Shown here one piece after another: positions 8,983 to 16,406 of a DNA stretch of 64,000 nt (position 1 is the stretch's first letter; every line of letters starts with the position of its first letter). The notes beneath the pieces were generated by a model, which saw only the letters and a program-made list of their open reading frames with translations, ran no database searches and was not told where the DNA came from. Both the position numbers and the translations under genes were made by a program. Origin of the DNA: Dimorphilus gyrociliatus (lineage: Eukaryota > Animalia > Annelida). The stretch is taken from NCBI GenBank assembly GCA_904063045.1, contig CAJFCJ010000026.1, positions 226,964 to 290,963 on the forward strand. The letters are read 5' to 3'.

Positions 8983-10578
8983 TTTAATGAAAAAAGAGAT
9001 TTTTTTATACGAAGAATTATCTAAAAACTAGTCGTAACAAGTTTAAGATCTTGGCGAAGGGATTATTTTTCCAGTCGAATAGGGAAAATAAAGAGAAATA
9101 TGTTTTATTAATATTATTATTATCATTTTATTATTATTTTATAAAACAACTCTCACACCAAATTCGATAAAAATAACATAATTGAATAAAATTTACCAAA
9201 AAAATGTACAAGCATAAAGAAAACTTGTGACTGATCGTATATAAACAGCAGTCGTTCGATGATGTTGTATACGAATACAGATAAAGATACACCACAATAT
9301 GTTTATATTTTATCACCAGCTGACTTTGCTGGCGACGAACAAGGTAAACTTTATTTCTTTGTTAACGCGGCTAACGTCTCGTCACAAAAAAAATAGATTT
9401 GGAAAATAACGTAATTTAAGGGAAAAAATAAACGAAAAACTCGAAAACTTGCATTCAAAATCAGTCATTCGTGCGGCTCGTTCAAAACCATGCATACAAA
9501 TTGTTATGACTAGAACAGGATCGACTAGACCGTGGCGATATGGTGGAATGTTTGAGATATGTAAGTAGAAGCTGGCGCCTGAACAGTGTGAATATAGTGA
9601 ATCGTTGGCGTAGATCGGACCTGGAATGTTGTACGAAAACGGAAGAGTGTGGCGCTATCACAGAAAAAATCGTCATCAAGTGCCATATACGCCACGCACC
9701 ATTTGCATATATATACCCATATTTTAACTATACACAAAAGACAGTAGCCACATAGTTATGTAGAAGACATACATACATTCTAGCACAAATATACGCACTT
9801 ATTTGTGCGCGTATGTTTGTGCATATTTAGAACCACTGCTTCTGCTTCATTTTAAATAAAACATGACGTTCCTCTCTTTTGCATAAAAATGTTTCTTTCT
9901 CAGAAAAATACTGAACAAATTAACATTATCTTCTATGTGCAACGAGGACGGCGCTTGTAAATTTATTGCGAAGGGAATGATGAGGAAGAAGTGAGGAAGT
10001 GCTACTAAATACGTGTGAAATGACGGTTAATATTCTATTGTCGCCACTTTCCTCCCTCCTTGCCTCCCTGGTGCAAAAAGACCGCCAGAGGGAATGCATG
10101 CATAACGAACACGTACAAACCGATTCATTCCTCCATTTTCTCTTTCATTCATTCCATATCATTCCCTCTTTCACTCCATCAGTCTTTCATTTCATAACAT
10201 ACAGAAATTTCTATACTCGTATTCCGTAGAAACGATTGCATAATGCACTAAACAATAGTATGGTACATAAAATCGTTTTAAAATATTGTACATTGCTGAA
10301 AATAAAATGCCAACAATTCGATAAAACACTTGAATAGAATGATTGAAAAGAGACAGCCACCTCATTATAGCGTGTGCAACAATAAATAAAACAAACAAAA
10401 AAGACAATGTATATGTACAAGAATGGCGTATTTGTTTGTTAAAATTCATTTTGTTATAATTATGTGTGTATATATAGGTCAAAAGGTTATAATTGAGACA
10501 GTAGGCGACTAGTATCGCGTGGAATGGCTCGCTGAGCGAGTGGACGGATGGAAGAGAGAAAAAAAAAATAAAATAGTG

Positions 10579-11015
10579 TCAGGCGCTGGTGCTATGGTGT
10601 AACAAGTCGCCGCCCTCCGGAGACCGATCACGTTCTATTCCTCCTCCTGCTTCAACGACGGCGGCAGTACAAGGAGAACCGTGAGAATGATGCTGGGCAT
10701 GTGACGGTGGAGGTGCAGATGCTGTAGCAGCGTGTAAGTTCGAACTACCCGCGCTGCTTCGATAATTGTTGCCCAGACCGTCTTCCCACTTATCAAGTGA
10801 ACGCCTTCTAGCATTCATGAAAAAGTTGGCGACGGTTGTAACGCTGAGACCGAGTTGTTGAGCAATACTGGCTTGCATCTCCTTCGACGGCCGTTTTGTC
10901 TCCTTGAATACTGCATGTAGCGTCCTGCGTTGTACTTCATTGAAGACAAAACGAGGCTTTTTCGTCTGTTTCGTTGGCGGATTGCAGTGGGGCTCAATTT
11001 CTTTGCGGTTGCACG
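10579..11015 (-). CDS. onecut: Onecut terminal exon 2B (distal homeodomain exon; alternative in-frame acceptor at 11090)
   Basis: Acceptor tgtttacag|CG is phase 1. It encodes ACNRKEIEPHCNPPTKQTKKPRFVFNEVQRR...NFFMNARRRSLDKWED...STSA*. Exon 1 + 2B = 1569 nt (522 aa). Confidence 0.85.
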
Positions 11016-11885
11016 CTGTAAACACCAAGCACCAGTCATCATCTATGTCATCTAGAATATGTACAGCTTTGTTTTGTTTTTTGTTTTGTTCTGTTTGTAA
11101 AAAGAAAAAGAAAAGACCGTCAATTCTGGTGCACTGGGCCAGCACTATGGTGGTGCTGTTGCTGCTGCTCAGCAGCTTCGGCCGCTATTGTATCATTACA
11201 GGCCGCCTGCACCACGTCGTTGGCATCAGTGTACTTATCAAGGGACCGTCGTCTAGCATTCATAAAGAAATTGGCGACTGTCGATACTTTTAGACCGAGT
11301 TGTTCTGCAATTGTTGCCTGCATCTCTTTTGACGGTCGCTTTGTTTCCTTAAAGATTGCCATTAGTGTTCGCCTTTGAATATCGGTGAAGACTAAACGGG
11401 GTTTTTTCGGTCCCGGTATCTCGGCTTTTGGCATTTCACTGTCCTTGCGTTTGCAAGCTGTATTAGAAAAAAGGAGAAAACCAACGAGTTAGTGAAAAAT
11501 TGTCGATTTCGAATCTCCAACGATCGACAATAGTTGCAGGCAGCATGCACGAACGTGCGCGTGCGATAATGACGACACACGAGGGAATGGACCGTCACCA
11601 GAATTTTGTAGAGACCATGCCACAAACAACAAGCAACTTATAAATGGGTATATTCGGGCATCTATAAGGTAGATAAACTGAAAGAAAAATCACTAAGCGG
11701 TTAACAGTTGTTTTTGTTCACTATACGATCAAAACTACTACGCGACCGTGTACATAGGCCCAACGACGTGCACCATCATCATGAAGATTTAGAGTCATTG
11801 TAAGCACCATAAACCACCACCATAGTGGGCTAGCATGCATTATTTTTAGAATCTAATAATAATAAATATATATATATATATATAC

Positions 11886-11921
<36 letters not shown>

Positions 11922-11928
11922 GCATATT

Positions 11929-11959
<31 letters not shown>

Positions 11960-14900
11960 TGATAGATAGATAGATATAAAGTATAATTATACAGTAATGT
12001 ATACTGCATATGCATATATTTACAGATTTATGTATGTATGTATGTATGGAATTTTATAAGAACAAATGCAATAATAATCGTGATAAATAAACATTTAATA
12101 GAAGCTTTTTTTATGCAAAAAAAAATCGTAGTTTGAATTTAACCGAGTGCTAATGATCCTATTTTTTACAGCAATGTTCACTAATAAGTTGGAAGTTTAT
12201 GATTATATCGCCCATATTGAATACCATAGTTAGATATTCCTTTAAAATATGTATTACTGTTGTTATGTTGAGGGTAGTCGTCTCGAAAACGTATTTACTG
12301 ACCACATAATTTCTCAACACGAACATATAGTATATATTTTACGTAACAAAGGGCAGTGAATAGCTAATTATATTATTTATTACGTTAACCTTATAATTTA
12401 GTAATTTTAGCTCTCGACAGAGAAATTTTAAAAATAAATTGTAGTTGTTAAATTTTCGATCAACACCTGTTGAGGACAAAGAAAAGGGAAATATTTTGTC
12501 TTTTATTTACATTTCTTCTTTTCTTTAGTAGTTCTAGAATTGGTATTACAGATTTGTAACTAGATGCAGTTGGAAAGTAAAAAAACTAGATTCAATTATA
12601 TATTAGAGCCTTTTGTTATGGCTTCTATATAGCCATTGAATAACACATAAAAGCGTCTAATCTCTTAGTTTTTGGCAAGCTTAAACACGATCATCAACAA
12701 TTCTTTCTAAAAATTAAACACTGACTTTTTTCAGTCAAGAAAATTAGTTTCCTCTTTTTAAAACGAAATTAAAGAACCTATTAATATTGGACAAGAGTGG
12801 TGTTGCTATTGACTGCAGAGAGACCAGAGGCGTCTTGATTGAAATGTATACTAAGTAAAAGATATAGAAGAAAGAAAAAAATTCTGTATAAAAAAAATCA
12901 CATCAGCGAGATCGCGTTCCTCGTAGTCAACGGCTACGAACGACAACAAACCCAACTGTGAAAGAATAAATAGAGACTGAAGCTGTAATTTTTGAACGTT
13001 GGGCAGGTGAGAGAAACGCTAGCGTCTGTTACTGTGGGTTCTCGTCGCTCATTACGATCGCCTTTGATGGCACCATGATACGCTTAATGAGCGACTGACC
13101 TCCTACAGAGTACCAAAGCGCTGGCGAACGAGTACATCACGGCCTAAAGTTAGCAGCGTCTAACCAACGTGTAGACGCTTTCCCCGCTCATTTCCTGCGC
13201 AGAGTGCACGCATCGCAGCTGTAAAACAATCGATATGTTCGATATGTTTTGGTTTTGAGGCAATCAATGGTGCCAGCTGACTGTCGTTTATCAGCTTAAT
13301 AACAATCACAAAACTACATTCGCCCAACCTCAAAACGCCTCAATTACTAGCAATTGGTGCAAACGCACCATCAGACTGGCGCCATTAGACGCTTGTTGTC
13401 CTGACAACGCTTGTAAACATTGCCCGTTAAGCTTATGAAAGTATGCTGATTCAGTAGCGGCAGCGGCCAACTTTTATTGTAGAATATTGTTACATTGCAT
13501 GTATTTAGCTATAGCGTTGTTTTGTTTATTGTATACGTCAAATATAGACTTCTATGTCATTCTTCTTGGTACATTCAATTTTTAAATTATCATTAAAAAG
13601 AACAAAGGCAATAAAACGATAATCGCAAATTTTTAACGGTTAGCGGAATTCTAAATATTAACGCATATTCTACTCTATTTTCTGTAAATTTTAGATTATA
13701 ATAAAGCTACATAAAAACATGACATCGCCTTATTTTATTATTGAAAACGTGCGAGATTATTATGATTATTCAAGCTATTGGCAAGCGCCAACAGTCAGTC
13801 TATTGTGCGCGTACAGTTGAACTATTGCAGTAGCCATGGCGTTCAAGCGCACCGTCATTGTGTTTCAACACGGGCGCTCACGCAAAAATATATTACGGAG
13901 GGGGGCCCCGTTTTTTCGAAATGCAATTAACGTACGGTCGAACATAGCCATTCCATTTTAAATTCTTTGTCTATAACACGTGGTGCCAGCGTCGCCGTGC
14001 ACCGTTTCACTATTAAACAAAAAGAAAAAAAAAAGCGTCAGACTGCGCGATGCATCGTGGCGTGACAGCTGTTACCAAGCCAGCCGTAACAGCAGAAACA
14101 GCAGCAGTAACAGCAGAAAAATCGGTAAACAATTCAAAAACAACAGTAATACCGCGACCGGTTTTGAACAGCAGCAAACATCAGCAAAACAACGTCCAGC
14201 CGAAAGGAAATTGCGATTTTCAAGGTGGCTACACTCGAAAATGAAGTAGCGCCGGTTCGGAGCATATTGCTCGCGGACAAATACAACTTCAAGTATACGC
14301 AGCACACATGCATACAGAATTTTAATAAGGAAATTCAAGTAGAATAAGGAAACCGTCCTCGCCGTGACGAAGAGTAGCCATGCATGCCGTATTTTTCCTG
14401 AAAGACGCGCACAAATCGGATGGTAATTTTCTTAGCGTTTCGCCTCAATCCCAAATCTCTCATCATATTTGTGCATTGCGTCTCTGGCGATTGTCGCACC
14501 CACTTTTACTAGACGGCATAGGCGCACCCGTTATCAGACGCCACAAGGGCCAAATAGCAAAAGTTGGCCGTCTAGATAAAGCCAAACTGGTGCACGTAAG
14601 CAACGAGATAGACATGCAGAGGGCGGGTGGCAACCGTTTAACAGGCGAAGGGTGTGTCCAGTCTATAAAGACCGTGACGAAGATTTAGACGGTTTTTAAA
14701 GAAGCGAGATTTTGTAACAGTAAAATCTTGGTATTTTTAAATATTATAACGGAACATAAATAGGTCGCACCAAGTAGATTTACACAAAAGGTGGCCTTTC
14801 TCGTAGGCGCAGTTACGTTTCAACATGCCCCGTTCCGGTTACTGCTTGTTCGACGCGCAAACTTTATAATCTAGACGCGTTTTTTCCCTGATATTCCCTT

Positions 14901-15106
14901 TATCATTAGCACTCGATTAAATTCGATTTGTTATTACTTGTACATAGGCTTCAACTTATTCACCTTAATAACTAAATATAAATTTAAGCCCATACATTTC
15001 TAACCTTCATGTACACATACATACTCACAAATTTGCATAAATATATATATATACTTAAATATAAATCTATGTATCTATATTTATACATATATATATATAT
15101 ATACAG

Positions 15107-15137
<31 letters not shown>

Positions 15138-16406
15138 AATTTATATATATATATGATATGTGGAATATAATGAATGTATGTATAAATATAAGTTCAGGAT
15201 AATAATAAATATTCTACAGAACTTAATGAGAGAGTAACTGTTGTAAAAAAAGGAGAAAAGCTTACTAGACTTACCAGCCAAGCGCAGAGCTGACATCCGC
15301 TGAAACTCTGGTTCTTGAAGCCATTTCCACATACGACGAAAAGTTTCACGGCCTGATTTCAGCTTCGACCACGGTTTAGGATTGCGTAACAGATCGGATA
15401 GAGTGCCTTGAGATCTACACAGAACACGCTGAGCAAATACAGCTTGAGGAATACTATAACGCTTCAATTCGCTGCTAATCTTCTGCGCCAATTCCTTCGT
15501 ATTAATCTCCTCCATGTCGTGCTTACCGTCGAGAGCTCCCCGCTCGCGAACCGGCGACATGGGCGAGTGGGCGGCGTGAGGAGAGGGCGTAGAACCGTGC
15601 AAACCGTTAAGGTGCATCATTGAGGTGTTGGGCGAATGCATTCGCGAGCTGCTAGTAGGCGAGCCGATTCCGGCTCTTGAGTATTCATAGACGGAATTTG
15701 GCGACATCATCTTCGGCTCAGGTTTTGGTGACATGATGCCATTATGTTGGCCATAAGCGGCCGCCGTACTGTAAGGAGAGGGTCCAAGTGCTTGAGGTGT
15801 TTGGTGGGCGGCATAACCGTTTGAGGCCATCATCACATTAGCGCTCATACCCATCATGTTAGATAACTGAGGTTTAACATCATAGCGGGCGTAAGCTGCT
15901 GATGTATTCATATCTACCATTGTATTCGACATAAGACTAAAACCAGATCCGCTCATATTTGGCGGTGAGGCTCCATGTCCAGCGGCAAATTTATCGCTCA
16001 CCGTCGAAATCGGAGGTAAAGGTTGGAGTGGAGTAAGAGTAGCGTAGCTGTTTGCCGACACGGCCTGATGATGATGATGGTGGTATGATGAGGGACTCAT
16101 ACGTCCGTTCAAAGTATGATAAGTTGCCGCTTCGGGAAGAGATCGGTAATCGCTGGCGTCGATCATTGCAGACACCGTTGAGGAATTACTGCCGTTCTGA
16201 TTTGTAGTCGCAGACACTGAATTAGCTGTAGCAGCGATGCCTTCCGATCGTGAAATGCTAGGCGACAGTTCGGCCGCATTCATTAAATCCTCTTGCTGCT
16301 GCTGCTGCTGTTGCGGCTGCTGACTGGCGGATGGTGGTGTGCTACCGCCAATACCGCTCGTGTCGCTGCGGATGCTTTGCTCTCCACCGCCGTTTTCCAT
16401 CGTCAT
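10579..16406 (-). CDS. onecut: Onecut (HNF-6 family) CUT-homeodomain transcription factor with two alternative homeodomain exons
   Basis: Exon 1 has a poly-His tract, the STP box YATLTPLQPLPPISTVSDKF and the CUT domain EEINTKELAQKISSELKRYSIPQAVFAQRVLCRSQGTLSDLLRNPKPWSKLKSGRETFRRMWKWLQEPEFQRMSALRLA. Two downstream exons each encode the ONECUT-type homeodomain with FFMNARRR. Confidence 0.95.
11120..11457 (-). CDS. onecut: Onecut terminal exon 2A (proximal homeodomain exon)
   Basis: Acceptor ttttctaatacag|CT is phase 1. It encodes ACKRKDSEMPKAEIPGPKKPRLVFTDIQRR...NFFMNARRRSLDKYTD...VHQN*. Exon 1 + 2A = 1470 nt (489 aa). Confidence 0.9.
11866..11976. repeat. Compound microsatellite, (TA)n followed by (GATA)n, in the Onecut intron
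   Basis: Directly visible tatatata... run, then gatagatagata... Confidence 0.9.
15040..15155. repeat. Imperfect (TA)n microsatellite near the Onecut exon 1 donor
   Basis: Directly visible TA runs. Confidence 0.85.
15275..16406 (-). CDS. onecut: Onecut exon 1 (N-terminus plus CUT domain)
   Basis: The first ATG is at 16406 (the ORF track start at 16415 is a GTG). The phase-1 donor CTG|gtaagt is at 15275/15274. Confidence 0.93.

What the first reader, a model, noticed from the sequence alone, without database searches (positions are those of the whole stretch)
10579..11457. Onecut gene with two tandem, diverged, intact homeodomain exons: swappable homeodomains on one CUT domain
Seen: one CUT exon ends in a phase-1 donor (15275). 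About 3.8 kb downstream are two exons only about 100 nt apart. Each starts with a phase-1 AG, encodes A-C-(K/N)-R-K, a linker and a full ONECUT homeodomain, and ends in its own stop. By my manual count the homeodomains differ at 11 of 59 residues, all outside the recognition helix (TVANFFMNARRRSLDK is identical). About 23 of the 48 conserved codons differ synonymously, which argues for an old duplication with both copies under purifying selection rather than a pseudoexon or haplotype artefact. Each copy keeps different ancestral residues: A has RLVFTD; B has LHA, QQL and DKW. Linkers and C-terminal tails are unrelated. There is no room for a second CUT exon between them and no AATAAA in the spacer, so isoform choice is probably by 3' acceptor competition, with 2B becoming 3' UTR when 2A is used. 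Established: canonical Onecut genes have one CUT domain and one homeodomain. Inference: exon duplication creates two Onecut proteins with different homeodomain N-arm, linker and tail from one promoter. I am not aware of this being described for Onecut but cannot search.
Basis: partly seen in the sequence, partly recalled or inferred. Interest (0 to 1): 0.9.

Follow-up and report, generated by a model that had tools for sequence, protein, structure and literature searches.

The report
Annelid Onecut gene with two alternative homeodomains
The Onecut transcription-factor gene of the tiny annelid Dimorphilus gyrociliatus has one CUT exon followed by two intact, diverged homeodomain exons, and the same exon pair occurs in distantly related annelids, so one gene can probably make two different DNA-binding proteins.

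Summary
The window comes from Dimorphilus gyrociliatus. On the minus strand, a CUT exon ends in a phase-1 donor at 15275. It is followed 3.8 kb downstream by two homeodomain exons, 2A (11457-11120) and 2B (11015-10579). Each has a phase-1 acceptor just before a C-K/N-R-K motif and its own stop codon.

The duplication is not specific to Dimorphilus. The 2A-type homeodomain (…IAEQLGLKVSTV…DKY) forms one well-supported clade. Other spiralian phyla in the sample have a single canonical homeodomain.

Exon A differs at 1 of 59 residues between Dimorphilus and Paralvinella despite saturated silent sites. Exon B evolves about seven times faster but is still constrained: 5 synonymous and 0 non-synonymous changes between two Dimorphilus lineages. 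Intron-free transcript contigs from other species join CUT to an A-type or to a B-type homeodomain.

I obtained no read-level splice evidence for Dimorphilus, because the single read-laying run failed. Alternative use of 2A and 2B there is therefore a strong inference, not a demonstration. GenBank splits this gene into two models. I found no published description of the arrangement.

The parts
15275..16406 (-). Onecut exon 1. The coding sequence starts at the ATG at 16406-16404. The CUT domain is at 15512-15276. The exon ends with the first base (G) of a split Ala codon.
   Evidence: Pfam CUT at E 1.9e-34. 100% match to DgyrCDS13633.
15269..15274 (-). Phase-1 splice donor GTAAGT. It reads GTGAGT at the same position in the second Dimorphilus lineage.
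11458..15274 (-). Intron of 3817 nt, about 58 times the genome's median intron length. It contains blocks conserved between the two lineages (about 14100-13800 and 13500-13300).
   Evidence: Median intron length of 66 bp from PMC7854359.
11458..11495 (-). Acceptor region of exon 2A. It has a CTAAC branch-point consensus at 11492-11488 and a tract of 80% pyrimidines, ending in CAG.
   Evidence: Identical in the second lineage apart from positions further upstream.
11120..11457 (-). Exon 2A, the A-type terminal coding exon. It encodes (A)CKRK, a 12-aa linker, the homeodomain (11407-11231) and a 41-aa tail ending GPVHQN, followed by TGA.
   Evidence: The A-type clade has 99/95 support. The C-terminal P/G-x-[QH]-N motif is conserved. 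Between lineages there are 3 synonymous and 1 non-synonymous change.
11016..11119 (-). Spacer of 104 nt between the 2A stop and the 2B acceptor. It has no poly(A) signal and is identical in the second lineage. It contains a strong in-frame alternative acceptor (AG at 11092-11091, with the exon then starting at 11090).
10579..11015 (-). Exon 2B, the B-type (canonical-derived) terminal coding exon. It encodes (A)CNRK, a 13-aa linker, the homeodomain (10962-10786) and a tail beginning DKWEDGLGNNYRSS, followed by TGA.
   Evidence: Between lineages the homeodomain has 5 synonymous and 0 non-synonymous changes, and the tail has 5 of each plus an in-frame 3-nt deletion.
9943..10578 (-). Probable shared 3' UTR. 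The only AATAAA is at 9967-9962. The first 300 nt are identical between lineages, and conservation breaks down at about 9900.
   Evidence: A 1406-nt Logan contig ends about 19 nt after the AATAAA (its DNA could not be retrieved).

Best explanation
This is the single Onecut gene of Dimorphilus gyrociliatus. It carries an ancient annelid pair of alternative last exons, each encoding a complete ONECUT homeodomain.

Shown:
- Both exons have phase-1 acceptors that match the phase-1 donor of the CUT exon.
- Both are intact and under purifying selection.
- The A-then-B pair, with the same acceptor positions and separate stop codons, is conserved in other annelids.
- In other species, transcripts join CUT to an A-type or to a B-type homeodomain.

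Inferred for Dimorphilus:
- Splicing 15275 to 11457 gives CUT-HD-A. Translation stops at 11120, and the mRNA runs on through exon 2B as 3' UTR to the only poly(A) signal at 9967-9962.
- Skipping the strong 2A acceptor and using the weaker 2B acceptor (11015, or possibly 11090) gives CUT-HD-B.
- The two proteins share the CUT domain and the recognition helix. They differ in the homeodomain N-terminal arm, helices 1 and 2, linker length and C-terminal tail. They would therefore most likely differ in how stably they bind DNA or in their partner proteins, rather than in the core DNA site they recognise.
For: Anatomy and phases.

Divergence of the two copies: dN 0.13, dS saturated.

Comparison of two Dimorphilus lineages:
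- The intron is 9.8% diverged.
- 2A has 3 synonymous and 1 non-synonymous change.
- The 2B homeodomain has 5 synonymous and 0 non-synonymous changes (P about 8e-4).
- Both exons together have 14 of 20 changes synonymous (P about 2e-5), plus an in-frame indel in the 2B tail.

Conservation of the pair: the A-then-B tandem with phase-1 acceptors occurs in Paralvinella (L006), ERZ26052287 (L007-9), GCA_029979725.1 (L011) and JAAUYG01 contigs (L018, L019).

Rate difference: the A-type homeodomain of Dimorphilus and Paralvinella differs at 1 of 59 residues but 47 of 177 nucleotides. The B-type differs at 16 of 59 residues.

Phylogeny: A-type sequences form one clade with 99/95 support.

The 2A stop is a real C-terminus: A-type tails end in a conserved P/G-x-[QH]-N-stop, including the Dimorphilus GPVHQN-stop.

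Transcripts in other species: the intron-free contigs L010/P0073 (CUT plus A) and L014/P0106 (CUT plus B).

Against stand-alone translation: the in-frame ATG at 11434 is ATA in the sister lineage, and 2B has no upstream in-frame ATG.

Shared 3' end: there is a single AATAAA, 611 nt after the 2B stop, and conservation extends to about 9900.
Against:
- No spliced Dimorphilus Onecut protein is in the 5.8-billion-protein database.
- A junction pattern found nothing in JGI metagenome contigs.
- The CUT-plus-A and CUT-plus-B transcripts come from two different unnamed species, so alternative use within one species has not been shown anywhere.
- The published annotation models a CUT-only CDS and a separate two-homeodomain CDS.
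- Low divergence across the whole 11700-9950 block (spacer 0 of 104, UTR 0 of 298) means that part of the conservation of exon 2A between lineages could be regional rather than protein-coding.
Confidence: 0.7

Rival explanations
1. Only one of the two exons is joined to the CUT exon in Dimorphilus. The other exon is kept for another reason, for example as a homeodomain-only product from an internal promoter, or as conserved 3' UTR or regulatory sequence.
For: There is no junction evidence. The whole terminal block, including non-coding parts, is highly conserved between lineages. The 2A acceptor is much stronger than the 2B acceptor (80% against 52% pyrimidines). The GenBank model starts a CDS at 11840.
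Against: Changes in the 2B homeodomain between lineages are all synonymous (5 to 0), and the 2B tail has an in-frame indel. 2B has no in-frame ATG. The ATG in 2A is not conserved. The phase-1 acceptors of both exons are conserved across annelids. CUT-plus-B and CUT-plus-A mRNAs exist in other annelid-like species.
Confidence: 0.13
2. 2A is an internal exon. A donor in its tail (T|GTAATG after 11200, phase 1) is spliced to the 2B acceptor, giving one protein with a CUT domain and two homeodomains.
For: A phase-compatible donor exists at 11200/11199, and joining it to 11015 keeps the reading frame. The GenBank 305-aa CDS fuses both homeodomains.
Against: The C-terminal motif and stop position of the A-type tail are conserved across species, including Dimorphilus. 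The A-type mRNA L010 ends at its own stop and continues into 3' UTR. The GenBank model has an implausible N-terminus that starts in low-complexity sequence. No ONECUT protein with two homeodomains appeared among the sequences retrieved.
Confidence: 0.07
3. The GenBank annotation is right, and these are two separate genes: a CUT-only gene that ends after a 53-nt mini-intron (…RLAVL*), and a downstream homeodomain gene.
For: Annotation DgyrCDS13633 and its neighbour. A similar AG|TTCTKTAG also follows the donor in the second lineage.
Against: The region just after the donor is the least conserved part of the locus (42-63% differences). In the second lineage the corresponding mini-intron would be only 36 nt. 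Every other Onecut joins CUT to a homeodomain at exactly this phase-1 position. The annotation weighted ab initio models where transcripts were lacking.
Confidence: 0.05

Closest known systems
Canonical ONECUT genes (vertebrate HNF-6/ONECUT1-3; mollusc, nemertean and brachiopod Onecut)
   Same: One CUT domain. A homeodomain with F48 and M50 (NFFMN). A phase-1 intron immediately before the A-C-K-R-K motif. A DKW…GNNNRES-type tail, which is retained by exon 2B.
   Different: Canonical genes have a single homeodomain exon. Here, and in several other annelids, a second complete homeodomain exon (A-type: E36, K41, Y60, with its own tail and stop) sits just upstream of the canonical one.
HNF-6 alpha/beta and spiralian Onecut linker isoforms
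   Same: Alternative splicing between the CUT and homeodomain regions changes how the two DNA-binding domains are connected. Mollusc and nemertean RefSeq isoforms differ by linker micro-exons. A possible in-frame acceptor at 11090 would add 25 aa in a similar way.
   Different: Those isoforms keep the same homeodomain. Here the whole homeodomain, linker and C-terminus are exchanged.
Meis/Homothorax alternative homeodomain exons (C. elegans unc-62 HD isoforms A1/A2; Capitella teleta Meis exon 9 tandem mutually exclusive exons)
   Same: A tandem exon duplication gives alternative versions of a homeodomain on a shared upstream domain (PMC4448998; PMC3140891).
   Different: It is a different homeobox class (TALE). 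Those cases involve internal exons that encode part of the homeodomain, with 5 aa differences in Capitella. Here complete homeodomains sit on alternative last exons with separate stops, differ at 11 of 59 residues, and have unrelated tails.
C. elegans ONECUT cluster (ceh-21, ceh-39, ceh-41)
   Same: Tandemly duplicated ONECUT homeoboxes at one locus (PMC4448998).
   Different: The source lists them as separate genes. Whether any share a CUT exon was not checked here.
CUX1/CASP
   Same: A CUT-class locus in which alternative 3' exons give products with different C-terminal halves (PMC10515288).
   Different: CASP lacks DNA-binding domains altogether. It results from a gene fusion, not from duplication of a homeodomain exon.

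Membership tests
ONECUT class homeobox gene | A single CUT domain upstream of the homeodomain | tested here: met
   Pfam CUT at E 1.9e-34 on exon 1. Only one CUT match was found in the locus by tblastn.
ONECUT class homeobox gene | Divergent homeodomain with F48 and M50 (…NFFMNARRR…) | tested here: met
   Both 2A and 2B carry TVANFFMNARRRSLDK. Pfam Homeodomain at E about 1e-11 to 1e-12.
ONECUT class homeobox gene | One homeodomain per gene | tested here: not met
   Two complete homeodomain exons lie 104 nt apart. The same is seen in Paralvinella and other loci.
Alternative last exons arising from tandem exon duplication | Adjacent homologous exons with the same acceptor phase, each compatible with the upstream donor | tested here: met
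   The donor and both acceptors are phase 1. This is conserved in four other loci.
Alternative last exons arising from tandem exon duplication | Both copies maintained by purifying selection | tested here: met
   dN/dS between A and B is 0.04-0.13. Between lineages 14 of 20 changes are synonymous, and the 2B homeodomain has 5 synonymous to 0 non-synonymous. Across species, A differs at 1 of 59 residues with saturated dS.
Alternative last exons arising from tandem exon duplication | Both exon choices seen in transcripts of the same species | tested here: inconclusive
   Read laying failed. CUT-plus-A (L010) and CUT-plus-B (L014) transcripts were found, but in different unnamed species. None was found for Dimorphilus.
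Alternative last exons arising from tandem exon duplication | Separate poly(A) site for the upstream exon | tested here: not met
   There is no poly(A) signal in the 104-nt Dimorphilus spacer. The only AATAAA is at 9967-9962. Paralvinella has ATTAAA and AATAAA in its 807-nt spacer.

The most novel reading that the evidence does not exclude
Annelid Onecut genes have carried a switchable homeodomain for roughly the age of the clade. It consists of a very highly conserved, annelid-specific A-type homeodomain exon and a fast-evolving descendant of the canonical exon. The two are used alternatively on one CUT domain from one promoter, giving two transcription factors with different DNA-binding stability or cofactor use. 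In the compacted Dimorphilus genome the pair has shrunk so far that exon B lies inside the 3' UTR of isoform A.
Probability: 0.55. Interest if true: 0.7.

Novelty: new variant of a known kind. Interest (0 to 1): 0.62.

Why it matters
Onecut factors are conserved regulators of neuronal, retinal and endodermal differentiation. They are treated as proteins with one CUT domain and one homeodomain.

A conserved pair of exchangeable homeodomains would be a natural experiment on what the ONECUT homeodomain contributes. Recent structural work argues that it stabilises CUT-initiated DNA binding allosterically (PMC11490551).

The pair would also change how annelid Onecut genes are annotated and counted. 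Homeobox surveys and annotation pipelines currently split the two exons or fuse them, as seen for Dimorphilus and Paralvinella.

Finally, it is a clear case of tandem exon duplication with very unequal evolutionary rates in the two copies.

Tried and rejected
- **Read laying.** No read or contig layout was obtained.
- **Junction pattern search.** A pattern covering both junctions (exon 1 to 2A and exon 1 to 2B) found nothing in JGI metagenome contigs.
- **Protein searches.** Searches with exon 1, 2B and 2A found no spliced Dimorphilus product. The GenBank 305-aa CDS did not appear either.
- **Reconstructing the 305-aa model.** Intron enumeration gave five equally possible exon chains, so the exact annotated structure is unknown.
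- **Owenia fusiformis.** No homeodomain lies within 10 kb downstream of its CUT exon, so the duplication could not be dated at the base of Annelida.
- **Patella caerulea.** The look-up failed, so no mollusc locus was inspected for a hidden A-type exon.
- **ESM Atlas search.** It was uninformative about taxa.
- **Linker micro-exons.** No homologues of other species' linker micro-exons were found in the 3.8-kb intron.
- **Mis-assembly.** Rejected, because independent contigs show the same arrangement.
- **Recent or lineage-specific duplication.** Rejected.

Full report
**Identity of the locus**

The exon-1 ORF matches DgyrCDS13633 of Dimorphilus gyrociliatus at 100% identity (GCA_904063045.1, contig CAJFCJ010000026.1). 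The gene lies on the minus strand. Exon 1 runs from the ATG at 16406 to 15275. It encodes a low-complexity N-terminal region and a CUT domain (Pfam E 1.9e-34). It ends ...GCT G|GTAAGT, which is a phase-1 donor.

**The observation**

After a 3817-nt intron there are two exons, separated by a 104-nt spacer.
- Exon 2A (11457-11120) follows a CTAAC branch-point consensus and a tract of 80% pyrimidines.
- Exon 2B (11015-10579) follows a weaker tract of 52% pyrimidines.

Each exon completes an Ala codon. Each then encodes C-K/N-R-K, a short linker, a full ONECUT homeodomain and a tail, and ends in its own TGA.
- 11 of 59 residues differ.
- 23 of the 48 identical residues use different codons.
- Nucleotide identity is 74%, with dN 0.13 and saturated dS.
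- The recognition helix is identical in the two copies.

Independent contigs from a second Dimorphilus lineage (SRR23372228, SRR23372229 and SRR23372216; 90-96% nucleotide identity) show the same arrangement. A mis-assembly is therefore excluded.

**What other spiralians have**

Thirty full-length Onecut proteins from molluscs, nemerteans and a brachiopod all carry one homeodomain: KKPRLVFTDIQRRTLHAIFKETKRPSKEMQATIAQQLGLEVTTVANFFMNARRRSLDKW, followed by a .DDNGNNNRES tail. Their isoforms differ only in linker micro-exons. Exon 2B keeps H17, QQL, DKW and the GNN.R.S tail, so it descends from the canonical exon. Exon 2A keeps the ancestral N-terminal arm but has E36, K41 and Y60.

**The main new result: the pair is old**

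A search with exon 2A returned dozens of homeodomain ORFs that share exactly the 2A-specific residues (…IAEQLGLKVSTV…DKY). One is from the terebellid Paralvinella palmiformis.

In Paralvinella (L006) the A-type exon is followed 807 nt downstream by a B-type exon. The same A-then-B tandem occurs in several unnamed assemblies:
- ERZ26052287 (L007-L009, spacer 571 nt);
- GCA_029979725.1 (L011, spacer 360 nt);
- JAAUYG01 contigs (L018, L019).

In every case each exon has an AG acceptor two bases before the C-K-x-K motif, which is phase 1, and its own stop. Two other groups of contigs carry an A-type exon with no B-type exon within the 3-10 kb retrieved.

In a maximum-likelihood tree of 83 homeodomains, the A-type sequences form one clade with 99/95 support. 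That clade sits inside the unresolved spiralian Onecut group. Dinophiliformia is placed as sister to Errantia plus Sedentaria (PMC7854359). The pair therefore predates the last common ancestor of Dimorphilus and Paralvinella.

**Selection on the two exons**

Across species:
- The A-type homeodomain differs at 1 of 59 residues between Dimorphilus and Paralvinella, despite 47 of 177 nucleotide differences.
- The B-type differs at 16 of 59 residues (dN about 0.21 against about 0.03).

Between the two Dimorphilus lineages:
- The intron is 9.8% diverged.
- Exon 2A has 3 synonymous and 1 non-synonymous change.
- The 2B homeodomain has 5 synonymous and 0 non-synonymous changes (P about 8e-4 for a synonymous-site fraction of 0.24).
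- The 2B tail has 5 of each, plus an in-frame 3-nt deletion.

The one non-synonymous change in 2A turns the in-frame ATG at 11434 into ATA. Exon 2B has no in-frame ATG upstream of its homeodomain. Neither exon therefore looks like a stand-alone ORF.

A-type tails end in a conserved P/G-x-[QH]-N-stop, and Dimorphilus has GPVHQN-stop. The 2A stop is therefore a genuine C-terminus. This argues against a CUT-HD-HD fusion made through the phase-compatible donor at 11200.

**Transcript evidence**

For Dimorphilus there is none.
- No spliced product is in the protein database.
- A junction pattern found nothing in metagenome contigs.

From other, unnamed species there are two intron-free contigs, most simply mRNAs:
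- L010/P0073 (SRR19644540) encodes a CUT domain, a linker and an A-type homeodomain ending …VVPQQN-stop.
- L014/P0106 (SRR24204647) encodes a CUT domain and a divergent B-type homeodomain.

These show that both exon types are joined to the CUT exon somewhere in this group. They do not show alternation within one species.

One lead remains unverified. A 1406-nt Logan contig from SRR31984834 starts inside 2A and runs through the spacer and 2B. It ends 636 nt after the 2B stop, about 19 nt past the only AATAAA (9967-9962). This is what a polyadenylated isoform A mRNA carrying exon 2B in its 3' UTR would look like. However, its DNA could not be fetched, and I could not confirm that the run is RNA.

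**Mechanism (inferred)**

The 2A acceptor is strong and the 2B acceptor is weak. The spacer has no poly(A) signal. Conservation between lineages extends from about 11700 to about 9900 and then collapses.

The simplest model is competition between the two acceptors, with a shared 3' end. The 104-nt spacer is perfectly conserved between lineages. Paralvinella has poly(A) signals between its A and B exons, so there the choice could be coupled to polyadenylation.

The recognition helix and the ONECUT arginine pair are the same in 2A and 2B. The homeodomain is reported to stabilise CUT-initiated binding allosterically (PMC11490551). I therefore expect the two isoforms to differ in binding stability or in partner proteins rather than in the core DNA motif.

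**Annotation**

GenBank splits the gene into two models:
- a CUT-only CDS, which ends …RLAVL-stop after a 53-nt mini-intron;
- a 305-aa CDS that starts in low-complexity sequence at 11840 and fuses both homeodomains.

The annotation pipeline fell back on ab initio and protein evidence where transcripts were lacking. The region just after the donor is the least conserved part of the locus. Paralvinella's annotation likewise lists two small homeodomain-only genes.

**Novelty**

Full-text searches found no description of paired Onecut homeodomain exons. The closest precedents are:
- the alternative homeodomain exons of Meis/unc-62 in C. elegans;
- the tandem mutually exclusive Meis exon 9 of Capitella.

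I class this as a new variant of a known kind. It is real, conserved and apparently undescribed. The central functional claim, that both isoforms are made in one animal, still needs junction reads.

Noticed in passing
window 15214-15274: GenBank ends DgyrCDS13633 with a 53-nt mini-intron followed by V-L-stop. A similar AG|TTCTTTAG also follows the donor in the second lineage, but there the intron would be only 36 nt. This is probably an annotation artefact, although a truncated CUT-only isoform is not excluded.
   Followed up: partly
window 13800-14100 and 13300-13500: Inside the 3.8-kb Onecut intron there are blocks with 0-3% divergence between the two Dimorphilus lineages, against an intron-wide 9.8%. 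They are candidate intronic enhancers. They show no similarity to linker micro-exons of other species.
   Followed up: partly
window 10279-10578: The first 300 nt after the 2B stop are identical between lineages (0 of 298), more conserved than the 2B coding tail (5.4%). This is a strongly constrained 3' UTR.
   Followed up: no
L002-L005 (SRR23372228, SRR23372229, SRR23372216) and runs X1, X2, X11-13: A second Dimorphilus-like lineage, 90-96% identical at the nucleotide level, appears in unrelated sequencing runs, including coral and marine metatranscriptomes. It is probably an aquarium-dwelling cryptic species or strain.
   Followed up: partly
L021-L045 (JGI Ga0056…, Ga0049…, Ga0209… contigs): One unnamed host group carries two distinct A-type homeodomain paralogues (…AIFKETRRPNKDMQATIAEQLGLKVS…LDKY and …AIFCETRRPNKEMQTMIAEQLGLKVS…TEKY). 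No B-type exon lies within the contigs. This suggests gene duplication and loss or relocation of exon B in that lineage.
   Followed up: no
L051-L055: In some metagenome-derived genomes the canonical Onecut homeodomain is itself split by an intron of about 270-430 nt between LGLEV and TTVANFF.
   Followed up: no
L006 10001-11436 (Paralvinella palmiformis): The public annotation lists the A and B homeodomain exons as two separate small genes of 110 and 122 aa. This is the same kind of mis-annotation as in Dimorphilus.
   Followed up: partly
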